Source: Octopus sinensis
Lineage: Eukaryota
Direction of reading: 5' to 3'
DNA: 64,000 nt
Assembly (NCBI RefSeq): GCF_006345805.1
Contig: NW_021836134.1
Span: 186,001-250,000, forward strand
Shown here: in pieces, positions 1 through 60,898 of the stretch
Layout of the letters: every line of letters begins with the position of its first letter
Position numbering within the stretch: the stretch's first letter is position 1
Made by a program: the position numbers and the translations under genes
Notes under the pieces: generated by a model
What the model saw: the letters and a program-made list of their open reading frames with translations, nothing else
What the model was told of the DNA's origin: nothing
Database searches by the model: none

Positions 1-592
1 ACTTCATCATGTAAGTCGAGGACATTGTAGTTGTTCATTTTAACCAAAATGCAGAAAATTTTTTTTAATTTTTTTGGGGGGGAAGGTTTTAAGGACTTCA
101 TCATGTAAGTCGAGGACATTGTAGTTGTTCATTTTAACCAAAATGCAGAAAATTTTTTTTAATTTTTTTGGGGGGGAAGGTTTTAAGGACTTCATCATGT
201 AAGTCGAGGACATTGTAGTTGTTCATTTTAACCAAAATGCAGAAAATTTTTTTTTAATTTTTTTTGGGGGGGAAGGTTTTAAGGACTTCATCATGTAAGT
301 CGAGGACATTGTAGTTGTTCATTTTAACCAAAATGCAGAAAATTTTTTTTTAATTTTTTTTGGGGGGAAGGTTTTAAGGACTTCATCATGTAAGTCGAGG
401 ACATTGTAGTTGTTCATTTAACCAAAATGCAGAAATTTTTTTTTAATTTTTTTTGGGGGGAAGGTTTTAAGGACTTCATCATGTAAGTCGAGGACATTGT
501 AGTTGTTCATTTTAACCAAAATGCAGAAAATTTTTTTTTTATTTTTTTTGGGGGGAAGGTTTTAAGGACCTCATCATGTAAGTCGAGGACAT
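1..592. repeat. Tandem array, ~94-96 bp unit, 6 full copies plus a partial copy (runs off the window start)
   Basis: Unit acttcatcatgtaagtcgaggacattgtag...ggaaggttttaagg starts at 1, 95, 189, 285, 380, 473 and 568. Copies differ almost only in homopolymer length. Confidence 0.97.
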
Positions 593-673
593 CGTATTGC
601 CAATTTGAAGTTGGTGTGCACACACAGACAGACAGACAGACAGACACACACCATACCATTTTATTATTAAGAT
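593..673 (+). mobile_element. Probable end of a non-autonomous Helentron/DINE/Lep1-like element with a (CAGA)n microsatellite
   Basis: (CA)n(CAGA)n at ~619-650 followed by an AT-rich tail ending ttattattaagat, directly after an internal tandem array. This is the usual layout of such elements. Confidence 0.45.
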
Positions 674-3235: not shown

Positions 3236-3600
3236 AATGAAACTGAATGGAGCATGTAGCTAAATCTCTACACGAATATTCACACGGAGGAGTAAACAAG
3301 ATTGAATATGAGTGTCGACAAAAATACTTCATTGTTAAAAATGACATAATCAGAAAAGTCATTCGAAATTGTGAAGTATGTAAATTTGCCTGTCCATTGA
3401 AAGTTTTAATTCTTTTTAATTTTTAATGTAGGTTGGTGATATAAATCATCATATTTTTGCTTCTTCTCCGAATGAAAGGTTTCAGCTAGATCTTGTAGAT
3501 CTAAAAAAGTTTTCAGTCTTAAATAATAATTACAAATTGATTTTAACAGTCATTGATGTTTATAGTAGGTTAGTAGTAGATCTTTCAATAATTTATTCAG
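3236..3600 (+). mobile_element. Ginger-like integrase fragment (H2C2 + first catalytic D) with an intron
   Basis: LHEYSHGG...CEVC, then intron, then ERFQLDLVDL..ILTVIDVYSR. Near-identical copy at 40590-40990. Confidence 0.7.
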
Positions 3601-3799: not shown

Positions 3800-4470
3800 T
3801 GTAATACAACTGGCTGCCTTCTTAATGATGAAGCCGTAAGAATTGGAGTTTGTCTGCGCCTCGGTCTACGCGTCTATGAAAAACACCAATGCCGGTGCGG
3901 CGTGTGGACTGACGAGTTTGGATATCACTCCTCTCCTGTCGAAACGGAATTGGACGTTCCTCACGGCATTCCGAACTGAACCAGATCATCTGTCGATCTC
4001 TTCGAACTGCTGGATTCCACACACAATTGGAACCTGTAGGGATTTTCGTAGAGGACGGCAGAAGACCCGATGGGATGACCACATTTCCATTCCAGAGGGG
4101 AAAGTGTCTGGTTTGGGACGTCACGTGTGTGAACTCCTTTTCCAATCAGAACATCAAATTATGCATCGAGAATCCTGGAGCCCGTCTGAACGGGCAGAAA
4201 AGAGAAAAGCTGAGAAATACGCTGGAATTGGGAATGGGAGAGTGTTTGTCCCCCTGGCTGTTGAGACGTCAGGAATACAGGGCCTTCTACTCGGACCCTA
4301 CTCCAGCGCATTGCCTCATTAATCGGAAGGGTTACCGGCGACCCGTGTGAGCACCGGTATTTAATCGAAAGAATATCTATAGCAATAGTCAGAGGCAATA
4401 CTCTGGCTATCTGCCAATGACTATTTCTCTTTGGTTTACATAAATAAAATTTAAATTTAAAAAAAAAAAA
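3800..4470 (+). mobile_element. 5'-truncated CRE-like (RLE-type) non-LTR retrotransposon, degenerate
   Basis: HQCRCG zinc knuckle, EPVG..DGRRPDG, WDVTC, PLAVETSG, RISIAIVRGN; A-rich tail at ~4455-4472. Confidence 0.85.
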
Positions 4471-4689: not shown

Positions 4690-5190
4690 TCCTTTGGATT
4701 GCACTTATTATCGTGTCAGAGGAGCTCCGGACGCTTTCCCTGACACGCTGCCCTGAACGACATAGTCAAGGGGACTCTTGAAACTGCCTGATTCCCATCA
4801 CAGTTGAAACCGGTCGGCCTGATTCAGGAGGATGGTAAACGTCCTGACGGCCTAACGACTTTTTCCTTCGAAAATGGCAAGTCGCTCATCTGCGACGCAA
4901 CTTGCACGGACACCTTCTCCGCCGGAAACATCTTTACGCCAGCCGCAGAGCCAGGCTCCGCAGCTAACCAGGCAGAAACGGTAAAAATCAAAAAATACAG
5001 TGCATTATCGCACCGTCATATCTTTGCCCCGATCGCAGTGGAAACGTCGGGAACTAAAAAATTCCTTATTAAATTGGGGGACCTGGCAAGCAGAACGAGA
5101 ACGATCATTGAGAACGGAAATGGCTTTTCCAACGCATATCAATAGCCATCTTGCGAGGAATTGCCACTCCATCTTATCCTCTGCTGCTAA
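4690..5190 (+). mobile_element. 5'-truncated CRE-like non-LTR retrotransposon
   Basis: RHAALND..., PVGL..DGKRPDG, DATCTDT, PIAVETSG, AILRGN. Confidence 0.85.
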
Positions 5191-5639: not shown

Positions 5640-6625
5640 ATAAAAACTTGGTTTGAAATTGAATTTAGAAAATGGAGATGAAGACACTGGCATTCGCTAT
5701 TCACCAAGAATGCCACTGGAGAATACTAAAGCTTCGTAAGAAGTGCTGTGAATTTTATTTACTGTGCAACACTGCCGGTTGCGCTGGAACACGATCTGAA
5801 ACACGTGGGCAAAACCCTGAAAAAATGCGAGGACTTGGACGAACTGCGAAGGCTTGCACAAAACCGCAGAGGATGGCAAACGATGGTTAAGAAGATTGTA
5901 TCGTGTGTGGCCCGTGTGGGAATATAACTCTTTTCTTTCGTTGTTTATGTTCCTACGGGAAGTGCTAATAATAATAAACGCCATATTATCAAACAAATTA
6001 TAAAAGACTTCGAAATTTGTAAATTTGCTGGGCCGTTAAAAGTATTTTTGATTAAATATACTTAGGTATCCGATTCTAGTTACCATGTAACGGCAAGAAA
6101 TCAAAATGAAAGATTCCAAGCGGATCTTATTGATGTTCGAAGATACAAAGATTTTAACGATGGATATAATTGGATATTAACAATTATTGACATCTACAGC
6201 AAATTCATAGTCTGCAAATCCATTAAAATAAATCTGCCTTTCGGAAAACTTAACATTTACTTCTAGAAGTTGGAAATAAATTTGAAAAAATTTTTGTCAA
6301 ATTGGATATTGTCAAATTTTACAAACGGACAACGGATTGGAATTCAAAAATCAACTGATAGATCAACTATGCAAGAAAATAAAATCAAACATATTTATGG
6401 AAGACCAAACAATCCCCAGTCACAAGTTTATAAATTTGAAATAAATTAGGGTGCAATTGAGCGCTTTAACCAAACATTGACACGGGGTATGATAAAACTG
6501 ATGGATAAAGAAAGAAGTAGAAATTGGAAACAATTTTTAGACAAAGTAACTTTTTCCTATAATACGACACACCACTCGGCGATCAATGAACCCCCCTTCA
6601 AAAAGTTTAGTTTTCAAAATCACCT
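5640..6625 (+). mobile_element. Ginger-like integrase, degenerate
   Basis: ERFQADLIDV, ILTIIDIYSKF, LQTDNGLEFKN, PQSQ|GAIERFNQTL (24-nt intron at 6426-6449), YNTTHHS. The full D-D-E triad is recognisable. Confidence 0.8.
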
Positions 6626-6634
6626 AGACAAATC

Positions 6635-6730
6635 AACCAACACGTAATGAGATTAACCAACAACACGTAATGAGATTAACCAACATCACGTAATGAGATT
6701 AACCAACATCACGTAATGAGATTATCCAAC
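6635..6730 (+). repeat. 4 x 23-bp tandem repeat at the 5' junction of the viral insert
   Basis: cacgtaatgagatta(a/t)c starts at 6641, 6664, 6687 and 6710. The last copy is in frame with the RdRp. Confidence 0.95.
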
Positions 6731-8732
6731 AAACTCGTTGGACCACATGTGAAGGCCACACACAGTCTTTCAACTATGAATATGCGAGGCTCACTGGTTC
6801 ACCTATCACAACCGACATGAATACCGTCATCAACCATTTCAATTTGTGGCTAAGGAAAGCATTTATCGCCCATAATCCACATCTTTCTATCAAAAGTATA
6901 GATCAGTGATTCTCAAGTGCGGCCCCTAGGATTTAATTTGCGCCCCTAGGTTTATAAATGTTTTATTTTTTAATTTAATATTTTAAATTTTATGAATAAA
7001 AAATGTCACGTTTTTTATTTGTTGTTGTGATGTCTGATTCTAAACGTTGTCGAAAACTTTTCCGAGGAAAATAGGATTTTTCAACACATCTGGAAGAAAA
7101 ATATTTCATTATTGAGATCAATGGAAAGGCTCTTTGCCTAATATGCCATTCTATTATTGCAACTCTAAAAACGTATACAATCGAACGGCACTACCGTTTC
7201 CACTCTATTCTTTATGACAAATTCACTGGTGTTTCTCGGACGAAAAAACTAAAACAAATGAAAGAAGATTATTTAAAACGATCATTTACTTTCAAAAGTG
7301 GCACATATTCGTCTAATATTAACCTGGCATCATACAAAATTAGTTACCTATTGGCTAAAAATATGAAGCCTTATTCTGATGGCGAATTATATAAAACGGC
7401 AATCGAAAATATTTGTCGGAATGTTGTTCGCCCGCTGTTTTCGATATTGCAACACAAGTTACCTCTAAGTAACGATACTGTTACTAGAAGAGTCAGTGAT
7501 ATATCTGATAATCTGATTAACGAACTTTTACAGTATGCAAATTGTTTGTAATTTTTAGAATTTGTAAAGATTTTCAATATTATTCTTTTGCGCTTGATTG
7601 TTCCAAAGATATTTCAGATATCGAACAATTAGTAGTGTTTATAAGGGGGAGTAACATGACTTTCGAGTATACGAAGAATTTTTTTCATTGAATTCACTTC
7701 ACGGAGAAACTAAGGAACAATGAAAAATTCAATGAGATTATTTGCATCTCCATTAATTATGAAAAGTGAGGAGGTTTCCGGGATTTACCAACTGGAATTG
7801 ATTGATTTGCAAAATGATGTTGAACTGAAAAGTTTGTTCAACAACATTTCAATAATTGACTTTTATTCGAGAATTCCAGAGAACCGATTTCCGAATTTAG
7901 TCAATAATGCAAAGAAAAATTAGCAATGTTTGGATCAACATATGTCTGCGAATCGACATTTAGTAAACTCGTTCGAATTAAAACAAAGTTTCGCAGCAGA
8001 TTGACTGATACTCATCTGAGTGATTTGTTACGTACTTCAACAAGTAGAATTAAACCTAATTTTGATTATTTGGTTAATAAATAATTCTTAAAAATTATTT
8101 GCGGCCCCTGTAAATTTTTTTTTTAATTTGCGGCCCCTGAGCAAAAAAGCTTGAGAATCACTGGTATAGATTGTTTGTGTTACGGCGATGACTTGCTATG
8201 TGCGGAAATCGAATCTGACCGCCTGTCTTTCTTACAGTGCTCTCTTGGTAAACGTGTTGGTTTAAAGGGTTCTCCTCCTGGAAGTCTCCCCTTTCTCGGT
8301 CGTTATTTCTTCCTCGATAACGTTCCCGATGAAATCAATTCTTTCCAGAATCCACTTCGCACGTTGCCCAAACTTTGTTTAGGCCTTTCCTTCACACAAT
8401 GGCAACAACGTCTTGCGGGCTACTCCATAACTGATTCTTCCACGCCTCTTATCGGTGACTATATTAAAGCAAATTACGATGGCCGCACCAAAGCTTCCTT
8501 CGATACAATGGGCTTTGTTCTTGTTGAAAAGTTCTGTGAGCTCTTTAGCAATTACAACACGCCCCGTTCCCTGGAGGTGATGTGTGATTCTTTATCCATT
8601 TCCATTGGCGAACTCCAGTGCTTTCGCGAGAAAATCCTTCGTAGATGTCCCGTTAATTTAATTCCTAGGGACGACACGCCCAGCTCTGGGACGCCCAGGA
8701 ATTATCCCTCAAAGGCCTCCCTGAGGTCCTAG
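6703..8732 (+). other. Endogenous viral element: nodavirus-like RNA1 RdRp (protein A) C-terminal part, split by a hAT insertion
   Basis: Joining 6703-6903 to 8172-8732 gives 253 aa with no stop: motif B RLTGSPITTDMNTVIN, motif C CYGDD, FLGRYF, SFQNPLRTLPKL, RLAGYSITDSSTPLIGDY. This is collinear with the alphanodavirus pattern FLSRVF...IQDPLRTLRKL...RVEGYLCTDALTPLISDY (recalled, not searched). Confidence 0.88.
6904..8163 (+). mobile_element. Internally deleted hAT (Charlie/Buster-like) element
   Basis: TIRs CAGTGATTCTCAAG...CTTGAGAATCACTG. Perfect 8-bp TSD GTATAGAT at 6896-6903 and 8164-8171. Transposase N-terminal part plus C-terminal dimerisation motif (MFGSTYVCESTFS). Related to 42244-44488. 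Confidence 0.95.
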
Positions 8733-9089
8733 AGAAGATAATGTCTGGGTGGCAGGTAAGTCTTAGTTTGCGGCTGAGAGGTGAGCGTGTGTGCGGGACT
8801 GAAAAGGCAGGAATGCCGAAGGTCTTAATATACCCTCTACTAACAGCCTTTTTAAAATAAAAATTTTTCCTTTCTTTCGGGGAAATCCAATTAATATGAA
8901 CAATTTAATTAAATACAAATTAAATATAAATATAAAAAACGACTAAATAGTGAAAAAAGCACAACATGGTAAACCCACAAGTGCTTAACGTGGCTTAATT
9001 TATTATATTTTTTATTTATAATTAAGATTAATTAAATAATTATTAATAAAAAAACTTTATTTGAATTAAAAAGATTTTAATGATAGGAC

Positions 9090-9730
9090 GCAAATATTGA
9101 CACCCATTTTCAACAATTTTCAATTTGAAGAAGAAAATTTTATTTCCCGAGCATAGAAGAGCTTCTATTGTAATTTTAACAAATTTTTAAACTATGAAAT
9201 TAGATTTTATCAAAAGTTTTCATAAAATGCCTTAAAACGTCAATTCCAGGCACTGTACCCGTCATTAGAATAATTCTGACAAACTGTTGGAATGCTTCAG
9301 TTATCCCTCAAACAAATACAGCAAGTTGAGAAGTATCTCTCTTTTATGCTTGCAGAATTTGTCGAATGCGATAGAAAAATATTCAAAATTTTCAAGTTTG
9401 AATGCGAGATCTAAAGGAAGAACTATAATTTGGATAAATGAGTCAAATTTTAATTTATTTTGTCGTTGTAAAAAAAGACGTTCATAAATTGGATGTCGGT
9501 CTATTGTTCTTGCACTTATTCTTATTTTTATTTAATCAATCCAATAGAACTTGCTTGGAGTTCATTCAAAGATGAAGTAAAGAAAAGAATTTGTGAAAAT
9601 ATGGATATAATTATAAATTATAAAAAACTGCAGAGGGACTGTCAATAACCGAATTCAGAATGAGAATCTTGGAAAGGATTGCAATTGAGGCAAAAGAACT
9701 ATTAACTCCACAAAAGTTAAGGGAATTCTC
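9090..9730 (+). mobile_element. Tc1/IS630-like DDE remnant
   Basis: IIWINESNFNLFCR and a degenerate NPIELAWSSFKDEVKKR. Confidence 0.5.
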
Positions 9731-12443: not shown

Positions 12444-13604
12444 ATGAAGCTAACTATTTTGTGGGTCATTTTTCTAACATATATTTGTGCAACCTTTAAA
12501 ATTCAAATCAAAGTCGGCAAAAAAAGAACAAATTTAACTAGTTTATTTGACACGAAAAGTAATCAGCGATGGGAAGAGTTCACTAAAAAATTTGGTTAGC
12601 ACCTAAAATATACAATTTTAGCGAAAAAATACAATCAGACAGAGGTGTTAAAAAGACGCCGCATTTTTCAAAATAATTTGGTTTTGATTGATAGACACAA
12701 TTTGGAATTGAAAAGAAATGCAACGTCCTTCCAGCTAAAAATAAACTCGTTTGCAGATATGGTTTTTTTGTGCTAAAAATATTCCAAGACTGAGGATGAA
12801 CTTCAAAAGCTAAATTATTTCGACACAAGAACATCTTTTTTCTCAGAAAACGAAAGAGATTTTTCGGAAAAATATGACATTCCAATATCTTTTGACTGGA
12901 GAGATAAAAATGTAGTCACAAATGTTAAAAATCAACTTGATTGTGGATCATGTTATATATTTGGCACAGTTTGTAAATAAATAATTACTCTCCAGATTGC
13001 CAGTTTAGAAAGTATATATGCGATTAAGCATAGAAAGCTGGTTAGTTTTAGTGAACAAAACGTGCTTGATTGTTGTAAGTATTGTGGATGTAAAGGCGGA
13101 AATGGAAGATACGTTTTTAAATATATCATTAAAAATGGGGGAATCAGCACAACTGAGCAGTACCCTTATCTAGGAATGGTTTATGAAACTGTACTTTATA
13201 ATAGAAAAAAGAATGCAAATATAAAAACAATCCAATAGTAGTCACAGATTATGTTAATACTTACTATTCCGAATCAAAGGCATTAAGAACTTTACTGGAA
13301 ATTGGTCCTATTGGGATTACACTTTGTATTCCAAAATATTTGCTTTTTTATTCAGGAGGTATAAGTGTGTAGCATTATAGGAATCTTTGATGATCCTAAA
13401 TGTGAATACTTACATTTAGTGTGTCTCGTTGGATATGAGGTAGATAATGGAAAAGAATACTGGATCATAAAAAACAGGTATTAAAATTAAATATAAAAAT
13501 AGTTGGGGTCGTGCTTGGGGAGAACATGGATACATCAGAATCGTAAGGAACATAATTAGCCAGTCGTGGTTGGAAATTCACCTTTTTATCCGCTTCTTGG
13601 TTAA
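12444..13604 (+). CDS. Cathepsin L-like papain-family cysteine protease (signal peptide + I29 propeptide), at least 6 micro-introns
   Basis: [16 protein letters not shown] signal peptide, ERFNIN-like RRRIFQNN...[23 protein letters not shown] (catalytic Cys), HLVCLVGY (His), WIIKNSWG (Asn). Introns are 22-27 nt (e.g. 13359-13380, 13478-13502). Apparent 1-bp frameshift before the C-terminal GNSPFYPL. Confidence 0.93.
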
Positions 13605-15073: not shown

Positions 15074-18000
15074 CTAGCTCGCTTCGCTCACCGCGACCTA
15101 GCTCCTGCGCAGGGCCTGTTTCATCAAACAACTATAAGTTTATGTAGATGTATAAACTACCTGGTTTAATGTAACCCTATTCTATCGCCTGTTGATAAAC
15201 GATGTTTGTCGTCCGTCCTTCCTTGGCATATATGAATAAATTTTCTCTTCTGCCTACCCTCGAGCATCCCACATACAGCTGTTCATGTGAAAAGCACTCA
15301 CTCTCTAAAAATAACCCAACTACCTTTAATGACTGTCCCTGGGCCTTGTTTATTGTCATTGCAAAACTCATCCTCAAAGGAAATTGCAGCCTTTTAAATC
15401 TAAATGGTAATTCATCAGAAATTATCGGAATTCGTGGAATATAAACATCCTCACCTCTATACTTGCCTGTTAATATCGTCGCCTCTATTACGCTAGCCAT
15501 TAAATTTTTGATAACTAACCTCGTTCCGTTGCATAATTTAGGTGGCGCAAGATTTCGTAATAAAACCACTGGAACGCCTATCTTTAATTTTAAAAGATGA
15601 TTTGGCATTCCTGAGGGATCTAAGGAGTTTAAAAATTCAACCGGATATTCGCAGGCTCTTTCATGGTCCATAATAACGTCCACCGATTTATATATTCTTT
15701 CTTCTCCAGGAATTTTGTTTAATAAATCTAAATTTATATTAAGTACCTCATCATTTAGCTCAGCTAATATAGCTCGTTCACGAAGCCAGTCGAAATTCCT
15801 GTAGTGTTCTGATAGTTCAGAATATACTGAACTGAATAATTCTCCTGCTGTATTCACATATATACATAATTCTTCCGGTAGACTGATTTTCTGATCCTGT
15901 ATATCTGAAGTAATTGCCCCATTTCCAATATCTAAAAGGATATTTGGAAATATGCTATTGACGCCTTGTAAATGTGCACGTACATTTACATCTAAGCTTA
16001 CCTTTTTGACGTGTGTCCACAGGTATGACGATTTGAGGCAGGCATTCAATTCATCCGCAGGCGTCCCTCTTTGAATAATTGGCAGAGTTTGTCTAAAATC
16101 ACCTGCCAATACAACTATTGCTCCCCCAAACAACAGTTCCTCACAATTCTTGATATCTCTATATTTTCTGTCGACTGCTTCGAATGCGCCCTTATGAGCC
16201 ATTGTGCATTCATCCCAAACAATTAACCTAGAATTCATAATTCTATAACCCGCAACTGAATTTTTTTTCACATTACAAACCGGTTCAGTATTGTAAGACA
16301 GGTTCAAGGGAATGTTGAATGTGCTGTTCGACCTCCATCTAAAAGAGTTGCAGCAATTCCAGACGATGCAACTGCTAATGCTATTTGATTGTCGCTTCTC
16401 ACCTTTGCTAACAATAAATTTAGAAGATAGGTCTTACCTGTACAAGATGATAGAACCATTTTCTTCTTGGATGACTCGGTTAATTTCTCTGTATATTTCC
16501 AACTGCCCAGGTAATAAGCTTTGTTCTCTTTCTTCCACAATTTTTTGAAGTTCTTCTAAATTATAATGCTCATCTAAAGAATTTATATTATGAAGATCAC
16601 TGATTGTTAAACCAAAATCACTTACACTCTTACCTACGACAGATATTAGCAATCTGTCTATCATGATTAATCCAATGTTGAAAATCTCTTCATCAAAAAT
16701 CGATCTATTCTTCTCTCTTAATATATCTTCGCACATGCTTTATCGATGCCCTTCCCACAGTTGCTTAGGATTTGCTAACCCACAATGGGCTAGCATCAAA
16801 GTATATAAATACCTTAGTCGCGATGGAGAATCTGCAATTGCGGCTTCTGTTAAAGTCTGATTCCAGTGGTTGTCATCCTCTAAAAGACCTAATTTAAAAC
16901 AGGCTTCTCTGTATGTTTCGCAGAGTACACCATTGACAGTCCGCAGATCAGTGAATGATTCTGGCCCTCGAATGTTGTGAAAAAGTAACCTAATACAATA
17001 ACATTCAAAATTATTTGGATGCACGGTATATACTCTATTCAATGCATCCGTACCTACAATACCGTTATGCCCGTTTACTGGCTCTCCTCTTATCCTTCTT
17101 TTAAATTTCTTTCCGGCCACTTCCCACGTATAATATCTAGGAACATCAACATAATAAATTGTCTTCGCAAATTTATCAGTCCGACATAATTCAAAGTAGG
17201 CCATAAGCGTTGAATTTTTTGGATTCATAACTTGATTACAGGCAGTTTCTTCTGTAAAATATATCCTTTGTCCATTTTCCAAGTGCACCGCTAAATGCAT
17301 TACTAATGGATATCTTTCATGAATCGGATATCCGAAAATTCTCCATGCTCCTTCATTACTGCAGATGAATCGTCCATGCTGAAAAAAGCTTGGCTCGTCA
17401 CGCTGCTCAATTGTAAAAATTGCTTGATCCGATTCTTTATTAATGTATTTACATACATATTTAATTGATCTAATAGAATTACAAAATTCAACATTAATAT
17501 GAGCATCAAAAATCTTACATAACAGTGGATTATAAGGCACCACCCACCTGTTGTCAACTGTTATTTCATTTTTTTTCCTTCGTGGAGAGTTGCAGTAAAT
17601 CCTCCTTCAGCTGTGCCCCTTCTTCGGTAAAGCGGAAATCCATTTTCACCTGTTTGCGTATTATATATTAAGTTTTTAGGGTACCCTTTAGAACACTTAC
17701 CATTTCGCATACACGGTGATGATCTGTTATACATGCCACATGGACCATGTATCATATTTCTTTTGATGATCTCGTATAATTCTCTATCTTCACTTGGATT
17801 TGGCAATTCTGCCCGTATGCAATCGTCTATCTCTGTAGCCCTAATTTTAGTGACTAACCATAACAATATGTGTATATGTGGCAAACCTCTTTTTTGCCAC
17901 TCTACTGTATACATGTGGCATCTTGTCTTTCCAAATATCTGTCCCTTTGTGAGAAGATCCATCATCTTATCGACTTTCCGTTTAAAAACTCTCGCAATGA

Positions 18001-19490
18001 TGTCTTGTCTATACTCTGCCTTTTGCCCTATAAATATGTTATCACTAATTTCTGGCCATTTTTGATTACATGTAAAAGTGATAAACAAATCCGGTGTTCC
18101 GTAATTTCTTACGTACGTCATCGCATCTTGTGTGCGTTCATGCATATATCTTGGTCCTCCCGTGAATGACGACGGCAAAATAACCATTAGACCTACATCA
18201 GTTACATTACCATCATTAATTATTGCATCTCTTAGATGTATATACTCCTCAGCTCTTAGTTTTCGCTGATTTAAACGAATGTAGAGAAGTCTCTCTGCTT
18301 CTATCTTTGCATACATATCTACAATAAACAGAAAAAATTTAATATAGTCAGTTAATAAATTCAGAGAAGAGATTGATTTGAGAAATCAATTGAGGAAGCC
18401 CGCTGCCTGTATGGAAAGCGAGTTCCCTCGGAGTATGGCTATTCCGATCCTTTGTCTTAGCCATACTCCTTCACGAGGATCATTTTTCTTTGTGGCGAGC
18501 ATTCTTCCGAGTTCGCGCAAGAACTCGGCAGTCGCTGGGCCAACAGCTCCTGATGACTCAGCCGCAACAGGGGTGAATCTGTAGCGGTCCCCGAGGAAGG
18601 AATATTTTTTGGTTTTAAGGTTTTCCGCGATTGAGGCAGGTGTCGGTCTAAGATCGGCGCTGGAGGTCGCGTACCCGGCATATCTTTCGTCTCTCTCAAG
18701 CTGCAACCATTTGACACGGCAAGTCCTTCGTCACACTATTGGACTTCGCTGGAATGAGTCATTTGATGAAGCTTGCCGGGATTGGAACGGGTCAGGACTC
18801 AAAATCCCCGAAGACACAACGAAACAAAGGAACTGGGATAACATTGTCTGCTCCAAAATTTCAGAAGGGCTTAAAAAAGAAGCAAATCAACATCGCCTTG
18901 CTTGCCTGGTGTCAGCCTCAAGTGGAGGGAGCGGAGCATGGCTTGGTGCAATCCCTTGCCCAAATCTCGGGACTTTTTTGGACGACGATTCTTTGAGGAT
19001 TGGAATCGGACAAAGACTTGGACTAGACGTTTGCCAGGAGCACCGATGCCGCTGCGGGAAAACGGTCGATGCGAAGGGATTGCACCCGCTATCCTGCAGG
19101 AGATCCGCCGGAAGAGGACCACGTCACGCCGCTCTGAACGACGTGATCGTCAGAGCTCTGAAGGCTGCAGGCTTCCCAGCACAGCTTGAACCAGTGGGTC
19201 TCGATCGAGGTGATGGAAAGAGACCTGACGGGATGACTCTTTCCCTTTCAACTCCGGACGATCTTTGGTCTGGGACGCAACTTGCGTCGATACTTACTCA
19301 AGCACGAATCTCCTTAAATCGGTTCAGACACCTGGAGCAGCTGCCTCAATCGCGGAAAACCTTAAAACCAAAAAATATTCCTTCCTCGGGGACCGCTACA
19401 GATTCACCCCTGTTCTACAATAAACTGATTAAATAAATGTCCTGTACGATGAATCATGTTGAAATCTTGCTCTCGTATCATTAACCTATT
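15074..19490 (-). mobile_element. Helitron (Rep + PIF1 helicase), frameshifted, interrupted by a CRE-like insertion, 5' part missing
   Basis: Rep motifs PDLFITFTCN, VEWQKRGLPHIHILLW, KYVCKYINK. Helicase motifs TGKT, WDECTM, GDFRQTLP, FAMTINKAQGQSL. 3' terminus CTAG (15074-15077) with GC-rich subterminal palindromes, followed by T. Confidence 0.95.
18330..19414. mobile_element. CRE-like non-LTR retrotransposon with a 5' inversion, inserted in the Helitron Rep gene
   Basis: TSD CTACAATAAAC at 18319-18329 and 19415-19425. 3' end on the minus strand (18330-18639), upstream part on the plus strand (18640-19414). 74-bp inverted duplication 18566-18639 / 19341-19414. Confidence 0.92.
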
Positions 19491-22900: not shown

Positions 22901-24059
22901 AATTAATTAATTTTAGGATACGGTCTCTAACGGATTGATAGACAATTTCTTTTGAAGACGGCAAAAGAAATCCTTTCGAATTGAAGATATTTAATTTTTA
23001 TAGCATTTTCAATGCATCTTCTGAATTAAATTACTTACTGATTTTTTTAGTTATCTTGTGTGCTTAAAACAGGCTGATTTCATGAGAATTTCTTCAACTT
23101 CATCTATCTCAGTGAAACTATAATCAGTAAATTCCGTTTGCTCTATCGGATTCAGAATTTTAAGCGTCATGATTATTTTATCGTAATTTTCAATCATTAA
23201 ATCTGTTCAATCCTTAAAAGATAATAAAAAAATTAAAATTAAATATCACCGTCCATTCAATAGATTACGCCATTGAACCGACTCAGGCAAAATTGGAATT
23301 TCGATCCTGCTTAAATTTTTTTTCTGTGACATTTGAAATCGTATTCACTCACTGCATTCCTCGTTTCGTTATTAAACTTCAAGTTTCACATTAAGCTGAG
23401 GCATTTCTCAGACGATACTTCTATTCTAAGATTGTGCTTTCCATATTTGAATTACTCTATTACATTCCAATCACTCTTGGGAGCACGCTCTAATCTTGAA
23501 TGGATAGCTATGAGGATTGATACCGCCTACTGTTTTCTATCTTCAAAAGATGGAAACTTCTATTCAGACAAAATCAAGCATTATTTCTTATCATATTAAA
23601 ATAAATCTTAAATGTACTATTTTACTTATTTCAAGTTATATATTTAAATGGTAGATTTGATCATTTTAAGTCCCAATTATAAATGCTAGATTTTGTGATT
23701 TTTTAGCATTAAATTTTAAGTGCTTTCCCGGTTTTTTATAGTTAGTTTGTTCATCACTAATATTTCTCCGTGTTTTTAAATCTTCCAAGAGTAAAATTAG
23801 AAGAAATAATAGTTCAAAAATATATATTAAGCTCATCGGGTTGTACTCAGATCGGAAGATCTTTCAGTATAATTTGAGTAAATATAGTCCATTTTCCCGA
23901 ATAGCAACTTTGAGTTTAAATCCTTTTCAAAGGAAATTGCTTCTTTGTTTGTTTGCAGTTTCACTTTGCTTCTCTTTAATAACTTTAGGTACCATAACTT
24001 TGAATCTTTTTCGAGCAGTTTGTTTAGTTCTTGCCATTAGATTTGTGTAAAAAATAGCA

Positions 24060-25310
24060 ACTCAAACCCCAGCCCCAACGACCCAGCTGTCAAAACCTGC
24101 ATCTGAAGACCCGAACCACCACTTGCCCTTCGGCGGGGACAACCTGTGCATCGGTTTTCACTCTGTCGCTAACCTTATATAAAAGCCTACAGTGCTTGAA
24201 GATATCTGAAGTGACCACCTATCAATGGAGATCAAAATTCACACTAGTATTGTTAAACAAGAACGCATATCCACACTACAGTCTCTCAAGGATAACTGGC
24301 CACACTAAAGGAGCTTCATGCAAGGAACGGTCGTCCTGTTGGCTACGATGAGTAAGTTAAGCAATTTCATGCTTCACTATCTAACATCGTACGGAGCATT
24401 CCCATGTGCTGACTGCGCACAGAGGACCACTCCAAGAGCGAAAGTGAAGAATCTCCTCAACGAGAGAAAGCGGCTGAGAAACAAACTCAAACGCTGTGTT
24501 AACCTTATTGACAAGGGAAGACTTAAGAACATGATCTCGGAAATTGGTTTAAAGTCCATGTTGTGACAAAGCTGGAAGCAGCCAGGAAATGGCAGAAGAT
24601 TTGTCAAATTTCTGGGACTGTTTCCGCAAAGTGGCTAACCTCGAAATCCTCACCCTTGATGGTGTGCAACCAGTCTGGTATGCCCGCCTCGCCACAAGAG
24701 ATCCCAAACATATTCGCAGAACACCTGGCCATTATCCAGGAGGACAATCCGGAAACGTCGCAAAGCCGGGAGTCGGAGCCACTTCCGCGTCCACTGTCGT
24801 CGGAACATCACCTGATTACCACTGCAACGCACCGGGTCATGACAAAATACCGATGCGGCTGTTTAAGGAAGTCTCCGAAGACTTACATGTGTTCCTTGCG
24901 GATCTGTTTACGGCAAGTCTTAAGTGGGGCTACGTCCGGATGATAAAAAGCCTGCGAAGCCGGTGAATCTCGCTACCAGCTACTGTCCCATAAGCCTAAT
25001 CCCAACTATCTCAAGGCTGATGGAAAAAATCATGGCCAAGCGCCTCGACTTCCACGCTGAAGAGATGAAAATACTGCTTCCGCAGCAATGGGGTTTTCTC
25101 TCTGGGTGTAGCTGCAGTGACTGTTTCATAACGGTACAGTCCACCATTTCGAGAGCAATGGAGTTCAAAGAAACTATCTTTTGTATGTCTGGACATCTCG
25201 AAGGCTTTCGACACCGACTGGCACAGAGACCTACTGGGAAGGATCCAACTCTGTGAGCCTACAGTGGAAGTCTATCTCTGGCTGCGCTGCTTCCTCTCAA
25301 ATTGTTACTC
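24060..25310 (+). mobile_element. Jockey/I-like LINE fragment (pre-RT and RT domains 1-3)
   Basis: SYCPISLIPTISRLMEKI, QQWGFLSG, LDISKAFD, across frameshifts. Confidence 0.8.
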
Positions 25311-41130: not shown

Positions 41131-41319
41131 ATATTCTATCCGACCGCTGAAATAATTAACATTTTATCAAAGTAAATTAAGTTTTTTTTATCAAATAATC
41201 GAGTCGAATCAATCATTTTTATTTAATAGATAAAATATGCTAAAGGAAAGATATGAACGGAACCAATGGCAAGACTAAAAATGATTAATTTTATTTTTTG
41301 TTAAAATGCATTATCAAAG

Positions 41320-42010
41320 GACTACATCCCCTGTCATGCAAAAGGAGTGCTGGCCGTGCTCCCAGACACTCCGCTATCAACGAGACTATTTCGGCTGCGT
41401 TACAAGCAGCTGGATTCCCGACAGAACTGGAACCCGTTGGGCTTGACCGCGGAGACGGTAAACGCCCAGATGGAGTCACCATTTTCCCGTGGAGTAATGG
41501 GAAATGCCTCGCGTGGGACTCCACGTGCACAGACACCTTCTCAAAGACCAATATAGTTGACTCCGCTATCAGTCCAGGCTCAGCCGCTGAGAAGGCTGAG
41601 GTACATAAAGTTCAGAAATATTCCAACCTGTTGGACAACTTCATCTTCTCCCCAATATCCGTAGAAACCTCCGGGGTCATGAGCCAAAAATCGTTCGAAC
41701 TCGTCGGGAAAATCGGGAATCTGATCTCGAGAAGACGGAGAGAGCCTCGGAAGAAGCAATGGTTGTTCCAAAGAATATCCATTGCGATCCTGAGGGGCAA
41801 CGTGAAGAGTTGAAGAAAAAGAAATACTCTTTCCTGGCAGACAGATATCTTTTCCAGCCGATCGCTGTGGAGACTTCCGGAGTCTTTGGATCAGAGAGTT
41901 TTTCGTTCATTCAAAACAATAATTGCTTATGAAAAACAATATTCAACGGTTCTCGATTGCCATCATCCGGGGAAACAGTTTGGCAATCCGCCAGGCTACA
42001 TATCTACCAT
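41320..42010 (+). mobile_element. Two head-to-tail CRE-like 3' fragments
   Basis: LHPLSCKRSAGRAPRH...RPDG...QRISIAILRGN, followed immediately by a second KKYSFLADRYLFQPIAVETSG...IAIIRGN. Confidence 0.85.
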
Positions 42011-42243: not shown

Positions 42244-44488
42244 CAGGGGTTCTCAAGTGCGGCCCTCGGGGCCGCATGCGGCCCCGAGAATCTTTTTTGC
42301 GGCCCCGACTTCCAAACTTTAAAATAAATTTTGGATATAAAATTAATTGTAAATTAATATTATTAAAGATAATATTTTAACTACACGTGTTTGTAAATAT
42401 ATTTCAGGTTGAGTATTTTTTCATGCCATCAAAGAAATATCGAACATTATCTCAAGAAAATAGAGAATTTCAAATTGAATGGGAAGAAAAGTTTTTTTTC
42501 GTTGAACTGAATGGTAAAGCTGTTTGTTTGATATGCAACTGTGTCATTAATTCATTGAAAAATTATACTATTGAACGTCATTATAAGAAGCACTCCGAAA
42601 TATACAATTTATATCTCGGAGAGTCAAGGAAAAAAAAACTCAATATATTAAAGACGTCATTTAAAAATCAGTCCTCAATATTTAAACCAGTGGAAAATAA
42701 GCATCAGTTATTAACGTCTTATAAAATTAGCCACCTTCTTGCTGTAAATATGAACCTTATTCTGACGGAGAAATTATTAAAACTGCTATTTCCATTTTTT
42801 GTGATGAATGTTGTCCGTCAAATATACAAAATATTGCAAAACGATTACCATTAAGTAATGATACTATTACAAGAAGAATAGAATGTATTTGTGAGGACCT
42901 TGCCCGTCAGCTAATCAAGTTCTTTACTATTAAAAATAATTTTTATAGAACATCGAAAGATTTTTTATATCATTCTTTTGCTGTCGACACGAGTAAAGAT
43001 ATCTCTGATACCGAACAAATGGTCGTATGCATTAGAGGTGTCACTTCGGATTTTAAAATTTCTGAAGAATTTTTTCTCTTCGTTCATTAAAAGGCACTAC
43101 AAAAGGAATGGATGTACTTAACGAATTCCTTGAAAGTATTAAAGAATTTGACATTGATCCTTCCAAAATAATTTCCATATGTACTGATGGGGGGGCGAAT
43201 ATGATTGGTCGTAATAAAGGGTTTCATGGACTTTATTCAGAATGGAGACTTGAAAAAAATCTTGATCCTATATTTTGGCAACATTGTATCATTCATCAGG
43301 AGAATATAATCGCAAAGTCACTTAAAATGCAAAATGTAATAAGTACGGTGTTGTCCATTGTGAATTGGATACGCGGTAAATCTCTCAATCACAGGAGATT
43401 TAAAAAAATGTTAGTGGAAATTGACACAGTGCATAATGATGTGCTTTACCATACCACTGTTCGATGGTTGAGTCGTGCCGCGTGCCTCAAAAGGTATATT
43501 TGCTTGAATAGAAGTTAGATTTTATGAACTACTCCCTCAAATAAGAGAATTTGTTAAAGACCACAAATACCATGATTTGTTGAGCAGTAAAGAGTGGATT
43601 GCCGATTTAGCTTTTTGGGTAGATCTAACCTCTCATTTATCGTCGTTAAATTGTGAATTACAGGGGAAATATAAATTTTGCCATCAACTCTATGGATCTA
43701 TTGCTTCTTTTATATCAAAATTAAAACTTTGGAGGGATCAAATAATGCTCAAAGATACAATTCATTTTACTTGTTTGAGTGAAAATAAAGCTAACGGTTC
43801 ATTTGAAAAATATACTACCATTATCAGTCACCTTATTGTTGAATTTGAAAAACGTTCTAAGGTTTATTAAAATTTAGTTTATTTTAAGAATTTTGATGAA
43901 ATTTTGCCATCAATGAAAATTTTTGCAGCACCATTCAATATAGATCCTAAGAATGCTCCGCCATCACTCCAATTAGAATTGATAGACCTTCAATCAGATG
44001 TGCAATTTACCTCAGTGCAAAAGATTGAAAATTTAATGGAATTTTATAGTTCACTTCCCAAAGAAAAATATCCGAATATACTCATAAATGCTTATAAATA
44101 TGCTTCAATGTTCGGATCCACTTATTTATGTGAGTCAATTTTCAGTAAAATGATTCACATAAAAAATAAATATCGAAATAAATTGACTGATAATCACTTA
44201 TGCCAGCTTTTGCGATCTACATGTGCCTCCTATATTCCGTGTTATGACAAATTAGTTAACAATTAGTTAAAATAGCTAACAATTTTTCGTTTTAGTTAAC
44301 AATTTTTCGTTTTAGTCATTTTCCTTTAATTAATTAAGACTAACTATCTCGGTTTCTGAATAAAAAATGAATCTAAAAAAAAATTAGTTAAAAGTTAATG
44401 AAAGTTTTAATTTAATTTATTCTGCGGCCCCGAAGACAATGGTTAATTATCGATTTGGCCCCGACGTTAAAAAACTTGAGAAACCCTG
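42244..44488 (+). mobile_element. Near full-length hAT (Charlie/Buster-like) transposon, frameshifted
   Basis: TIRs CAGGGGTTCTCAAG / CTTGAGAAACCCTG. Perfect TSD TTCTAGAA at 42236-42243 and 44489-44496. CLIC..RHY..H, ICTDGG, HCIIHQE, VRWLSR, MFGSTYLCESIFS. Confidence 0.96.
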
Positions 44489-44790: not shown

Positions 44791-45939
44791 TAGATTCTAG
44801 TTGATAAATCAATAATAAGATTGTTTGAAGTTTATCGATAAATTGACAGATTAACATTAATTGAAGCTCAGTGTAACGTGCATCGAATAAGTATCATTTG
44901 GCCCATGTCACATATTAAATGACTCACCGTTACAAATGAACAAATGATAACGAAAAAATCGTCAATAGAATAAAAATTTTTAGTACTTAAAAAATGTTAT
45001 GTTTATAAAAATGAAGAAAATTTCAGGCAATTTTACAAAATTGATGCCCCAAATGGAGTTTATACTGTATATAAAAAACTTAGGTGGTCGTGGGAAAACG
45101 ACAAGTATATGAAAAAGTACAAAAAATGATTAAAAATTGAATAAATAAATATTTCAAAAAATATCAGCGTTACAGAAATTTCAAAATGAGTAAAAGAAAC
45201 AAATTATAGGAATAAATTCGAAAAATATCACAAAATGATGAAATTTCAAATAATTTAATCATTAAAAGAAACTGCATCTCGAAATATTCCCACTAAATCA
45301 AATTATATAAAAAATTAAGAAAAGGGTTAACTATATACACAGCAGCACAAGGTGAATCAACTGCGTGCTCACATGTGAAATAATTTATTAGGTTTACCAT
45401 TAAAAATTGAGATAATTAAACAATAATTAATAAAAAATAAACCATATTCTAATTACAACATTGCCACAGTAATTCTTCAAATTACGCAAGGAACTACTGA
45501 GTCGGACATTTGGTTCATGTACCTATTGTATTAACATGGGATTGGCTGGTTACTCAAAAATTCCTACAATCTGCACGTTTTTATCGATCAAGCCTTTTTG
45601 GAATGTTATCACAATCTCAATAAGCAGATTGTGCTCCTCATGTCCGTCTCGTTAGTCTGGACTTTAGTATTTGTATTCACAGAGTAATTCGCACTCTTCG
45701 ACTAAAAAGAATAGATTTTCAACCTTCCAGATTTCGTAATTCCATACTCCCTGCACAACATAGTTTACTTGTCGTCATAAATAGTCACTATTTAGATTCT
45801 CATAATAGTCACTTTTATATATAACAGAATTTATTAAACGAAGATCCAATTTATTAAACGAAGCACTTTTATATATAACACAACTATTCATTCTTCCATA
45901 AACGAAACATTATTTAAAAAACAGGGAACACAGACACAA

Positions 45940-46440
45940 GGCTTTCAATGAAATCGTGAAGGCCGGTCTCAAATCAGCGGGCCATTCCTGTCTCCTCGAA
46001 CCGGTCGAACTCGATCGGTGAGACGGCAAAAGGCCTGACGGGATGACAATATTCCCGTACTCGTCCGGGAAAGCCCTCGTATGGGATGTTACCGTTGTGG
46101 ATACCTTCTCAAAGTCGAGGATCGATTCTTTCGCTGCGAACCCTTGTTCGGCTGCAAACCACGCCGAAAGGATGAAACTACAAAAGTATTCTTCCCTCGC
46201 GAACCGTTGCCGTATTACGCCAATCGCTCTGGAGCCGCGGGAAAGGAGATTGACTTGTTTCTCAGCGAGGTCGGACAGTCCATCGGGAGGAGACTTAAGG
46301 ATCCGAAAGATGGCCTCTGGTTCCGCCAGCGCATCGGTCTGGTCATCGTTCGCGGCAACTCACACTGCGTCCTTGCCGCTGGCACATAATTTTCTATGGG
46401 TGCTGATATTAGCTTTTCCAATAAATGATATTTGAATTTA
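45940..46440 (+). mobile_element. 5'-truncated CRE-like non-LTR retrotransposon
   Basis: RHKAFNEIV, EPVELDR..GKRPDG, WDVTVVDT, QRIGLVIVRGN. Confidence 0.85.

Positions 46441-59491: not shown

Positions 59492-60898
<1,407 letters not shown>

What the first reader, a model, noticed from the sequence alone, without database searches (positions are those of the whole stretch)
6703..8850. Endogenous nodavirus-like RdRp with an intact frame, split by a hAT and apparently nested in a Ginger integrase
Removing the hAT and one TSD copy yields 253 stop-free codons with RdRp motifs B, C (YGDD) and E, plus the nodavirus-like PLRTL.KL and GY..TD..TPLI.DY blocks. About 110 nt of GC-richer sequence follows the stop and may be the viral 3' UTR. 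Nodaviruses have no DNA stage, so this records reverse transcription of a +ssRNA virus and germline integration. The lack of stops suggests it is recent. It points to an undescribed nodavirus infecting this small-intron animal. Flanks (..NEPPFK / F..FRGNP..) suggest insertion into a Ginger integrase ORF (inference).
Basis: partly seen in the sequence, partly recalled or inferred. Interest (0 to 1): 0.85.

Follow-up and report, generated by a model that had tools for sequence, protein, structure and literature searches.

The report
Noda-like virus polymerase fossil in transposon
A piece of the polymerase gene of an unknown nodavirus-like RNA virus was copied into DNA, landed inside a decayed transposon integrase gene of an animal with 22-27-base introns, and was later split by a hAT transposon; this kind of viral fossil is known, but this virus lineage is not.

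Summary
Two stop-free pieces (68 and 201 codons, + strand) lie either side of a 1.26-kb hAT-type transposon. Both match the C-terminal third of noda-like virus replicases.

- **Single-sequence search:** the downstream piece finds 12 genuine hits among 1.8 billion proteins, with E from 4e-6 to 9e-4. Named ones are Hubei noda-like virus 10, Flumine nodavirus 10 and Mosinovirus.
- **Profile search:** a profile built from those relatives alone scores the pieces at E=4e-21 and 5e-7. They sit end to end on the profile and keep motif B, GDD and the post-palm blocks.
- **What is missing:** no other part of the replicase is in the window. It is a 5'-truncated, non-functional endogenous viral element.
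- **Divergence and age:** identity to anything public is at most 41%. It has no stops and 41-49% GC against flanks of about 28%, so it is fairly young.
- **Flanks:** they belong to an integrase gene (H2C2 plus rve) with host-type 24-29-nt introns. This is Ginger-like, but TIRs and TSDs were not found.
- **Unknowns:** the source of reverse transcriptase and the exact junctions are unresolved. The host was not identified; it is probably a dicyemid or a myxobolid.

Nodavirus EVEs have been known since 2016, so this is a new member of a known kind.

The parts
5975..6605 (+). Upstream part of a decayed integrase gene, from the end of the H2C2 finger through the DDE core to ...YNTTHHSAINEPPFKK. It has two 24-nt GT-AG introns at 6042-6065 and 6426-6449. 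It is 5'-truncated by a LINE tail and has at least three reading-frame changes.
   Evidence: rve_3 at E=2.1e-4 and weak rve. Homologues P0016-P0019 carry rve, with tblastn E=4e-18. Introns.
6606..6744 (.). Filler of unknown origin between the integrase and the recognisable viral sequence. It includes a 23-nt tandem repeat (4.1 copies) at 6638-6732.
   Evidence: TRF gives period 23 with 95% matches. It is unique in the window. It has no homology to replicases.
6745..8732 (+). Noda-like replicase (RdRp) gene fragment, given as one part from motif B to the stop codon. Breaks: one 5' truncation (about the first 60% of the protein is missing) and one insertion (a 1.26-kb non-autonomous hAT-type transposon with TIRs and an 8-bp TSD). 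There are no in-frame stops and no detectable frameshifts. The frame may extend upstream to 6703.
   Evidence: for the RdRp. for the nested hAT.
8733..8857 (+). GC-rich tail after the stop. It is possibly the viral 3' UTR, or former coding sequence.
   Evidence: GC is 0.49 against 0.27 downstream. It folds as a long hairpin with z=-1.9. It has no homology in any frame and no Rfam match.
8866..8946 (+). Probable continuation of the same integrase reading frame (FPFFRGNPIN... to a stop).
   Evidence: P0016 reads ...TTPFQLFFRRSG and the 22k paralogue reads ...IPFEILWEPN across this point. The window has PFKK upstream and FFRGN downstream. The match is positional and short, so the evidence is weak.
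42244..44488 (+). Larger relative of the nested hAT, with related TIRs. It shows that the family lives in this genome.
   Evidence: 66-70% DNA identity. TIR matches with 2 mismatches at both ends. zf-C2H2_12 domain.
45860..45925 (+). Short paralogous integrase fragment that ends at the same ...FKK codon. Here it is followed by a 5'-truncated LINE.
12570..13604 (+). Host cathepsin L-like gene with six GT-AG introns of 22-27 nt. It is context for identifying the host.
   Evidence: The splice model reads through. Peptidase_C1 relatives are at most 40% identical.

Best explanation
This is a non-retroviral endogenous viral element, a DNA copy of about the last 1 kb of RNA1 of a divergent, undescribed noda-like positive-strand RNA virus. 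That stretch covers the C-terminal ~250 residues of the replicase, from motif B onward, plus a probable 3' UTR.

**Order of events read from the nesting (shown).**
1. An intron-bearing integrase gene of a Ginger-like element decayed in a transposon-rich region.
2. The viral cDNA inserted into its coding sequence just after the DDE core.
3. A non-autonomous hAT then transposed into the viral sequence, between motifs B and C.

**How the RNA became DNA (inferred).** A host retroelement reverse transcriptase copied the viral RNA from or near its 3' end. It stopped or switched template about two thirds of the way up RNA1. The product was then joined into chromosomal DNA in the germ line. LINEs are the likelier source, because LINE fragments abound here and no LTR element is visible.

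**What it does now.** As a protein, nothing. It has no start codon, no motif A, no capping domain, and is interrupted. At most it is a template for small RNAs, which is untested. The open frames and virus-like GC content mean the integration is young in neutral-decay terms.
For: **Viral origin**
- phmmer of the downstream piece against 1.84 billion proteins gives 12 genuine hits, E 3.9e-6 to 8.8e-4.
- Named hits are Hubei noda-like virus 10, Flumine nodavirus 10 and Mosinovirus protein A.
- All ten hits scanned match viral RdRp families, and seven of them also carry Noda_Vmethyltr.
- The best solved-structure match is 8fm9, 'RNA-directed RNA polymerase', at E=0.054 over the post-palm blocks.
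- An independent profile scores the pieces at E=4e-21 and 5e-7, collinear and abutting.
- Motif B, GDD and later invariant columns are kept.

**Truncation**
- No other replicase part is anywhere in the 64 kb.

**Residence in host DNA**
- The nested hAT has TIRs and a TSD, and a relative lies elsewhere in the window.
- Integrase remnants lie on both sides.

**Youth**
- There are no stops in 256 codons. P(no stop) is 0.24 at d=0.05 and 0.06 at d=0.1.
- GC is 0.41-0.49. The nearest relative's contig is 0.49 and the flanks are 0.27-0.30.

**Reverse transcriptase source**
- No LTR pair lies within 20 kb.
- The Pfam census finds one RVT_1 match and no gag or protease.
- LINE tails flank the locus.

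**Precedent**
- eBxnv-1 is a nodavirus-like EVE embedded in a transposable element (PMC5177903).
Against: - Pfam RdRp models do not hit either piece.
- The word-indexed protein search found nothing.
- The predicted fold (pLDDT 68.7) gave no significant structural match.
- The single-sequence E-values are modest, and the top hit (P0001) was a spurious CARDB-repeat protein.
- The junctions are not clean. There is no poly(A) tail and no convincing TSD, and 140 nt of unexplained filler with a 23-nt tandem repeat sit at the 5' side.
- The downstream integrase continuation rests on about 6 residues.
- There is one assembly, and no reads were available to check it.
Confidence: 0.8

Rival explanations
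1. Capture inside a retrotransposon particle. The viral RNA recombined with the RNA of an LTR retrotransposon during reverse transcription (two template switches within its integrase region), and the chimera then integrated. This is what was proposed for eBxnv-1.
For: - The viral piece sits inside an integrase ORF, and both flanks look contiguous in that ORF.
- There is a precedent in Bursaphelenchus (PMC5177903).
- This copy is truncated upstream by a LINE, so RT upstream cannot be excluded here.
Against: - No LTR pair lies within 20 kb.
- No gag, protease or RNase H appears in the window census.
- The integrase gene and its paralogues carry spliceosomal introns at a conserved position. That does not fit a pol gene that replicates through RNA.
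- The 40.3k paralogue has an ATG with AT-rich DNA upstream rather than RT.
Confidence: 0.1
2. The fragment comes from an RNA-virus lineage outside the noda-like viruses, some other branch of the wider group of related polymerases. The nodavirus label would then be an artefact of database sampling.
For: - Identity is only 20-33% over the downstream piece.
- It lies on the longest branch of a neighbour-joining tree.
- The capping domain that defines noda-like replicases is missing from the window.
Against: - Every genuine hit whose domains or name could be read is noda-like.
- The conserved post-palm blocks are shared with the solved 8fm9 chain, deposited as 'RNA-directed RNA polymerase'. From my own knowledge this entry is the Flock House virus replication complex; no tool confirmed that.
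- They are invariant across the 12 relatives.
Confidence: 0.07
3. It is an exapted host gene. The open frame would be kept by selection for a protein-level role of the polymerase remnant.
For: There are no stops in 256 codons.
Against: - It is split by a transposon.
- It has no start codon.
- Stops lie immediately upstream in frame.
- It lacks motif A.
- It sits in a field of dead transposons.
- Having no stops is not unusual for a young insert.
Confidence: 0.03
4. It is an assembly chimera or contamination. Reads from a virus-infected sample would have been joined wrongly to host DNA.
For: Only one assembly was seen, and read support could not be checked.
Against: - A host DNA transposon with a TSD lies inside the viral sequence, and that family recurs in the window.
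- Both outer flanks continue one integrase frame.
Confidence: 0.02

Closest known systems
eBxnv-1, the endogenous nodavirus-like element of Bursaphelenchus xylophilus (PMC5177903)
   Same: Both are RNA1/replicase-derived sequences of a noda-like virus fixed in an animal genome. Both are embedded in a transposable element that encodes an integrase. In both cases the parent virus is otherwise unknown.
   Different: eBxnv-1 lies in a BEL/Pao element with LTRs, a primer-binding site and a polypurine tract, and it is expressed. Here only the last third of the replicase is present and no LTRs are found. The integrase gene has introns, and a hAT has since split the viral sequence. Expression is unknown.
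Replicases (protein A) of noda-like viruses: Hubei noda-like virus 10, Flumine nodavirus 10, Mosinovirus. The PDB chain 8fm9 belongs with them; identifying it as Flock House virus protein A is from my own knowledge, not from a tool.
   Same: Motif B, GDD, the FLGR-type block and the conserved post-palm blocks are shared, in the same order and spacing.
   Different: Identity is at most 41% in the core. About the first 60% is absent, including Noda_Vmethyltr and motif A. The C-terminus is shorter than in all relatives that reach their own C-terminus: about 46 residues shorter than the nearest (P0003) and roughly 100 or more than the full-length ones.
Non-retroviral integrated RNA virus sequences of mosquitoes (PMC5497376)
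   Same: Both are fragments of RNA-virus genes lying among transposon debris.
   Different: The mosquito elements are mostly from flavi-like and rhabdo-like viruses, sit next to LTR retrotransposons and are documented to yield piRNAs. None of that could be tested here.
Ginger DNA transposons (PMC2836005)
   Same: The flanking gene encodes an H2C2 finger plus a DDE integrase core. It contains introns and shows no RT next to it.
   Different: No TIRs with the TGTNR terminus and no 4-bp TSD could be found, because no complete copy is in the window. [quoted passage not shown]

Membership tests
Noda-like virus replicase (RNA1 protein A) | Palm motif C (GDD) in a beta hairpin | tested here: met
   G8, D9 and D10 of the downstream piece are invariant in 12 relatives. 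The model shows strand-turn-strand there.
Noda-like virus replicase (RNA1 protein A) | Palm motif B (GS..T...NT type) | tested here: met
   The upstream piece keeps the residues in the columns that are 82-100% conserved. Profile E=5e-7.
Noda-like virus replicase (RNA1 protein A) | Conserved blocks after the palm that are shared by noda-like replicases | tested here: met
   Invariant G46, R47, F49, P64, R66, K70, G86, Y87, T90, D91, T94 and P95. The same stretch aligns to PDB 8fm9 residues 719-790.
Noda-like virus replicase (RNA1 protein A) | Motif A and the upstream polymerase motifs | tested here: not met
   Profile positions 1-64 have no counterpart, and tblastn of 14 relatives finds nothing else in the window. 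The fragment is truncated.
Noda-like virus replicase (RNA1 protein A) | N-terminal Noda_Vmethyltr capping domain | tested here: not met
   It is present in 7 of 10 hits and absent from the window.
Noda-like virus replicase (RNA1 protein A) | Best database matches are noda-like replicases | tested here: met
   The one exception, P0001, is a spurious repeat protein.
Nodaviridae in the strict sense (alpha/beta genera) | Phylogenetic placement inside the family | tested here: inconclusive
   In a neighbour-joining tree of 13 sequences it is a long branch next to an unnamed contig. Sampling is too thin to decide.
Non-retroviral endogenous viral element | Virus-derived sequence is contiguous with host DNA on both sides and carries a host transposon insertion | tested here: met
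   Integrase remnants on both sides. Nested hAT with a TSD.
Non-retroviral endogenous viral element | Junctions supported by independent DNA reads, or an orthologous or empty site in relatives | not testable with these tools
   The host genome is not in the searchable collections.
hAT transposon (the nested insert) | 8-bp target-site duplication and short TIRs | tested here: met
   (I1).
hAT transposon (the nested insert) | hAT C-terminal dimerisation domain | tested here: met
   PF05699 at E=2.8e-4, 21.1 bits against a cut-off of 21.4, so it is borderline.
hAT transposon (the nested insert) | Intact DDE transposase | tested here: not met
   Only zinc-finger and dimerisation remnants are present, in several frames. 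It is a non-autonomous copy.
Ginger DNA transposon (the flanking gene) | Transposase with an H2C2 finger and a Gypsy-integrase-like DDE core | tested here: met
   Integrase_H2C2 at E=1.1e-6 in the paralogue at 3247-3423. rve and rve_3 are weak in this copy. Homologues carry rve.
Ginger DNA transposon (the flanking gene) | No reverse transcriptase or RNase H beside the integrase | tested here: inconclusive
   None was seen, and the 40.3k copy starts with an ATG after AT-rich DNA. However, every copy in the window is truncated or interrupted.
Ginger DNA transposon (the flanking gene) | TIRs of 40-270 bp with a TGTNR terminus | tested here: inconclusive
   No inverted repeat was found between the candidate 5' and 3' ends. 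No complete copy is available.
Ginger DNA transposon (the flanking gene) | 4-bp target-site duplication | not testable with these tools
   The element ends are not defined.

The most novel reading that the evidence does not exclude
The integration is very recent and the parent lineage still circulates. That lineage would be a deep-branching noda-like virus of an ultra-short-intron parasite: a dicyemid, or less likely a myxobolid myxozoan. As far as my literature searches show, neither group has a described virus or endogenous viral element. The locus could then be polymorphic in populations and feed small-RNA defence against the living virus.
Probability: 0.25. Interest if true: 0.6.

Novelty: new member of a known kind. 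Interest (0 to 1): 0.4.

Why it matters
The fragment is physical evidence that a noda-like RNA virus once replicated in germ-line cells of an animal with 22-27-nt introns. Only myxobolid myxozoans and Dicyema are reported to have such introns (PMC13644364). The nearest public sequence is at most 41% identical, so the fragment samples a virus lineage that metatranscriptomics has not yet reached, and it gives a specific probe for finding it. The three-layer nesting (integrase gene, viral cDNA, hAT) also gives a clean relative chronology for transposon activity in this genome. The phenomenon itself, non-retroviral EVEs including nodavirus-derived ones, is established.

Tried and rejected
- **Pfam on the two pieces:** no RdRp family was detected.
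- **Word-indexed protein search of the downstream piece:** no hit.
- **Exact-protein look-ups of two window ORFs to find the source assembly:** nothing on record.
- **Cathepsin L splice model searched to name the host:** the best hits are at most 40% identical and taxonomically mixed.
- **Structure:** the AlphaFold model of the downstream piece has pLDDT 68.7. Foldseek against the PDB gave nothing below E=0.5. A few viral polymerases appear among the noise.
- **Rfam on 6500-9100:** no match.
- **Tail after the stop, translated in all three frames against the relatives:** no homology. A hidden frameshift or a B2-like ORF can be neither shown nor excluded.
- **LTR search over 20 kb:** none found.
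- **TIR search for the integrase family:** none found.
- **P0001, the top hit of the large search:** rejected. It is a 2569-residue CARDB-repeat protein on a contig with bacterial-type neighbour genes, and its score is the sum of many weak repeats.
- **An intron-like GT-AG 23-mer just after the integrase break (6606-6628):** considered, then dropped, because the downstream reading does not continue the integrase.
- **A degenerate 16-nt A/T-rich duplication at the two outer junctions:** noted by eye at 10-12 of 16 matches. It is too low in complexity to call a TSD.
- **SRA run of the nearest relative:** not found in the literature.
Full report
**What is there**

On the + strand between about 6700 and 8860 the GC content rises to 41-49%. 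The nested transposon is 31.5% GC and the outer flanks are 27-30%. The region holds two stop-free stretches of 68 and 201 codons, separated by a 1.26-kb insert. I give no coordinates for the insert.

**The insert is a hAT-type transposon**

- It ends in perfect 14-nt inverted repeats and is bracketed by a perfect 8-bp duplication (pair I1).
- The terminal motif occurs four times in the window against 0.5 expected, and 0 of 100 shuffles reach four. The other two occurrences bound a 2.2-kb relative at 42244-44488, which shares 66-70% DNA identity internally.
- Its remnants include a Spin-doc type zinc finger and a hAT dimerisation domain at E=2.8e-4, just under Pfam's cut-off.
- No catalytic core is left, so it is a non-autonomous copy.
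- A cut-and-paste DNA transposon with a target-site duplication inside the virus-like sequence is the strongest internal evidence that this sequence was chromosomal DNA of this organism.

**The two pieces are polymerase**

- Pfam did not recognise either piece, and the word-indexed search found nothing.
- The exhaustive phmmer search of 1.84 billion representatives returned 13 proteins at E<=1e-3 and none below 1e-10.
- The top one (P0001) is a false positive. It is a 2569-residue CARDB-repeat protein on a contig with bacterial-type neighbour genes, and its score adds up many weak repeats.
  - Those with names are Hubei noda-like virus 10, Flumine nodavirus 10 and Mosinovirus protein A.
  - All ten that I scanned match viral RdRp families, and seven of them also carry the Noda_Vmethyltr capping domain.
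- The only solved structure within reach is 8fm9, 'RNA-directed RNA polymerase', at E=0.054. It aligns over the conserved stretch after the palm.
- BLAST of each piece against these proteins puts the upstream piece immediately N-terminal of the downstream piece in the same proteins. Examples are 689-724 and 724-828 of P0009, and 90-126 and 125-228 of P0003.
- I built a profile from twelve relatives with no window sequence in it, and ran it against all 1101 six-frame segments of the window. The downstream piece scored E=4e-21 (profile positions 110-277) and the upstream piece E=5e-7 (positions 65-106). Nothing else scored below E=3.
- In 65 columns that are at least 75% conserved among the relatives, the window has the commonest residue in 38. 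These include motif B, GDD, an FLGR-type block where motif E lies, and the later invariant glycine-tyrosine and threonine-proline positions.

**What is missing**

- tblastn with all the relatives finds no other part of the replicase anywhere in the 64 kb.
- A Pfam census of the 116 longest open segments shows no capsid or other viral family.
- The fragment therefore starts between motifs A and B, about 60% of the way into a roughly 1000-residue protein.
- It has no start codon, and stop codons lie just upstream in its frame.
- Counting breaks in the viral gene gives one 5' truncation, one transposon insertion, no in-frame stops and no detectable frameshift. The profile alignment of the downstream piece is a single uninterrupted domain.
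- The reading frame ends about 46 residues earlier than in the nearest relative and roughly 100 or more earlier than in the full-length ones.
- The C-terminal regions are not conserved, so I cannot tell a native stop from a late frameshift. No frame of the tail matches anything.
- The 120-nt tail is 49% GC. It folds into a long hairpin with z=-1.9, and 11 of 200 shuffles fold as well. It matches no Rfam family. A 3' UTR is a fair reading but unproven.

**How far from known viruses, and how old**

- Identity to the relatives is 20-33% over the downstream piece and 31-41% over its first 105 residues. That is below the 34-64% the relatives show to one another.
- In a neighbour-joining tree it is the longest branch, next to P0003.
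- P0003 comes from a 1257-nt contig of uniform 49% GC whose frame runs open from the contig start. This looks like a fragment of an exogenous virus.
- The lineage is therefore noda-like but unsampled. Placement inside Nodaviridae proper is undecided.
- 3.7% of possible single substitutions in the 256 codons would create a stop. The chance of seeing none is 0.24 at 5% divergence and 0.06 at 10%.
- GC content has stayed close to that of the exogenous relative rather than drifting toward the host's 27-30%. Together these argue for a young insertion, though not necessarily a very recent one.

**The flanks**

- Upstream (about 5975-6605) lies an integrase gene remnant. It runs from the end of an H2C2 finger through the DDE core to a motif that matches rve_3 (E=2.1e-4) and metagenomic rve proteins (tblastn E=4e-18).
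- Four other fragments of the family lie in the window, at 3.2k, 22k(-), 40.6k and 45.9k. One gives a clear Integrase_H2C2 match at E=1.1e-6.
- What look like in-frame stops in the remnant are two 24-nt GT-AG introns, at 6042-6065 and 6426-6449. The first sits at the same codon as a 29-nt intron in two paralogues. Apart from these, the remnant has at least three frame changes and is cut at its 5' end by a LINE tail.
- The homologue P0016 reads ...TTPFQLFFRRSG and the 22k paralogue reads ...IPFEILWEPN across the point where the window has ...EPPFKK upstream and FFRGNP... at 8872 downstream. So the viral sequence very probably lies inside one integrase reading frame, though the downstream evidence is only a handful of residues.
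- Introns inside the gene, an ATG preceded by AT-rich DNA rather than RT in the 40.3k copy, no LTR pair within 20 kb, and no gag or protease in the census all fit the Ginger description (PMC2836005).
- No TIRs were found and no complete copy is available, so membership stays open.
- One metagenomic homologue sits beside a helicase. This is a reminder that similar integrases occur in other element types.

**How it got there**

- This part is inference. Between the integrase break and the first recognisable viral residue lie about 140 nt of unexplained filler, including a 23-nt unit repeated 4.1 times and found nowhere else in the window.
- The 3' junction has only a short A-rich run and no convincing duplication.
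- The viral piece reaches to, or close to, the 3' end of RNA1 and stops partway up. That is what a reverse transcriptase starting at the 3' end and falling off or switching template would give.
- LINE fragments are plentiful around the locus, and LTR elements are not seen, so I favour a LINE enzyme. The retrotransposon-capture route shown for eBxnv-1 (PMC5177903) is the main rival.
- A short paralogous integrase fragment at 45860-45925 ends at the very same ...FKK codon and is followed by a 5'-truncated LINE. I have no explanation for this coincidence.

**Host**

- A cathepsin L-like gene at 12570-13604 reads through with six GT-AG introns of 22-27 nt. Its best relatives are at most 40% identical and taxonomically mixed.
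- Exact look-ups of window proteins found nothing.
- Introns this short are reported only from myxobolid myxozoans and Dicyema japonicum (PMC13644364).
- The window also holds a Tektin gene from about 59.5k. Tektins are ciliary proteins, so from general knowledge this leans toward a ciliated dicyemid. That is a lead, not a test.

**Verdict**

The kind of thing is known: nodavirus-derived EVEs have been described since 2016. What is new is the virus lineage, the probable host group and the tidy three-layer nesting.

Noticed in passing
window 6638-6732: A 23-nt unit is repeated 4.1 times (95% matches) directly 5' of the viral sequence. It is unique in the window, and its last unit runs into the viral reading frame. 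Its origin (viral, host or made at integration) is unknown.
   Followed up: partly
window 12570-13604 (+): A host cathepsin L-like gene has six GT-AG introns of 22-27 nt and uses the standard genetic code. Such introns are reported only for myxobolid myxozoans and Dicyema (PMC13644364).
   Followed up: yes
window 6042-6065, 6426-6449, 3403-3431; 22.1-22.2k (-): The integrase gene family carries host-type ultra-short introns. One position is shared by three copies with lengths of 24 and 29 nt. The 22k copy has a 27-nt intron at a different position.
   Followed up: partly
window 45860-45925, then 45926-46430 (+): A short integrase fragment ends at the same ...FKK codon as the copy that holds the viral insert, and a 5'-truncated LINE follows it. 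The shared end point is unexplained.
   Followed up: partly
window 3840-4320, 4792-5142, 18609-19436, 41298-41813, 45930-46430 (+): There are repeated GC-rich LINE 3' parts with a cysteine-rich block followed by ...RPDG...DVT.... From memory this resembles the restriction-enzyme-like endonuclease of R2-type LINEs. The three of these stretches that were scanned (3840-4319, 4792-5142, 18609-19433) match no Pfam family.
   Followed up: no
window 23930-24061 (-): An open segment contains MARTKQTARK, like a histone H3 N-terminal tail. It lies about 1.4 kb upstream of the integrase copy at 22.0-22.55k on the same strand.
   Followed up: no
window 15177-18385 (-): A Helitron with Helitron_like_N (E=7e-54) and PIF1 helicase domains in long open frames. 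It is possibly a young copy.
   Followed up: no
window 1-600: A tandem satellite of about 94 nt with at least six copies runs to the window edge.
   Followed up: no
window 59492-62061 (+) and 62766-63998 (-): Host genes are present. A Tektin match was located at 59492-59806, and the best Tektin E among window segments is 4.6e-31. The extent to about 62.1k is assumed, since the later segments were not located. A class I tRNA synthetase (E=1e-36) runs off the window end.
   Followed up: partly
protein P0001 / locus L002: The top hit of the 1.8-billion-protein search was a CARDB-repeat protein on a contig with bacterial-type neighbour genes. About 20 repeats each weakly resemble residues 58-104 of the downstream piece. 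This is a warning about summed scores on repeat proteins.
   Followed up: yes
window 31139-31516 (-), 32239-32643 (-): Two open segments match the short Sec_GG Pfam motif (E about 1e-8) with no aligned stretch passing on its own. This is probably a low-complexity artefact.
   Followed up: no
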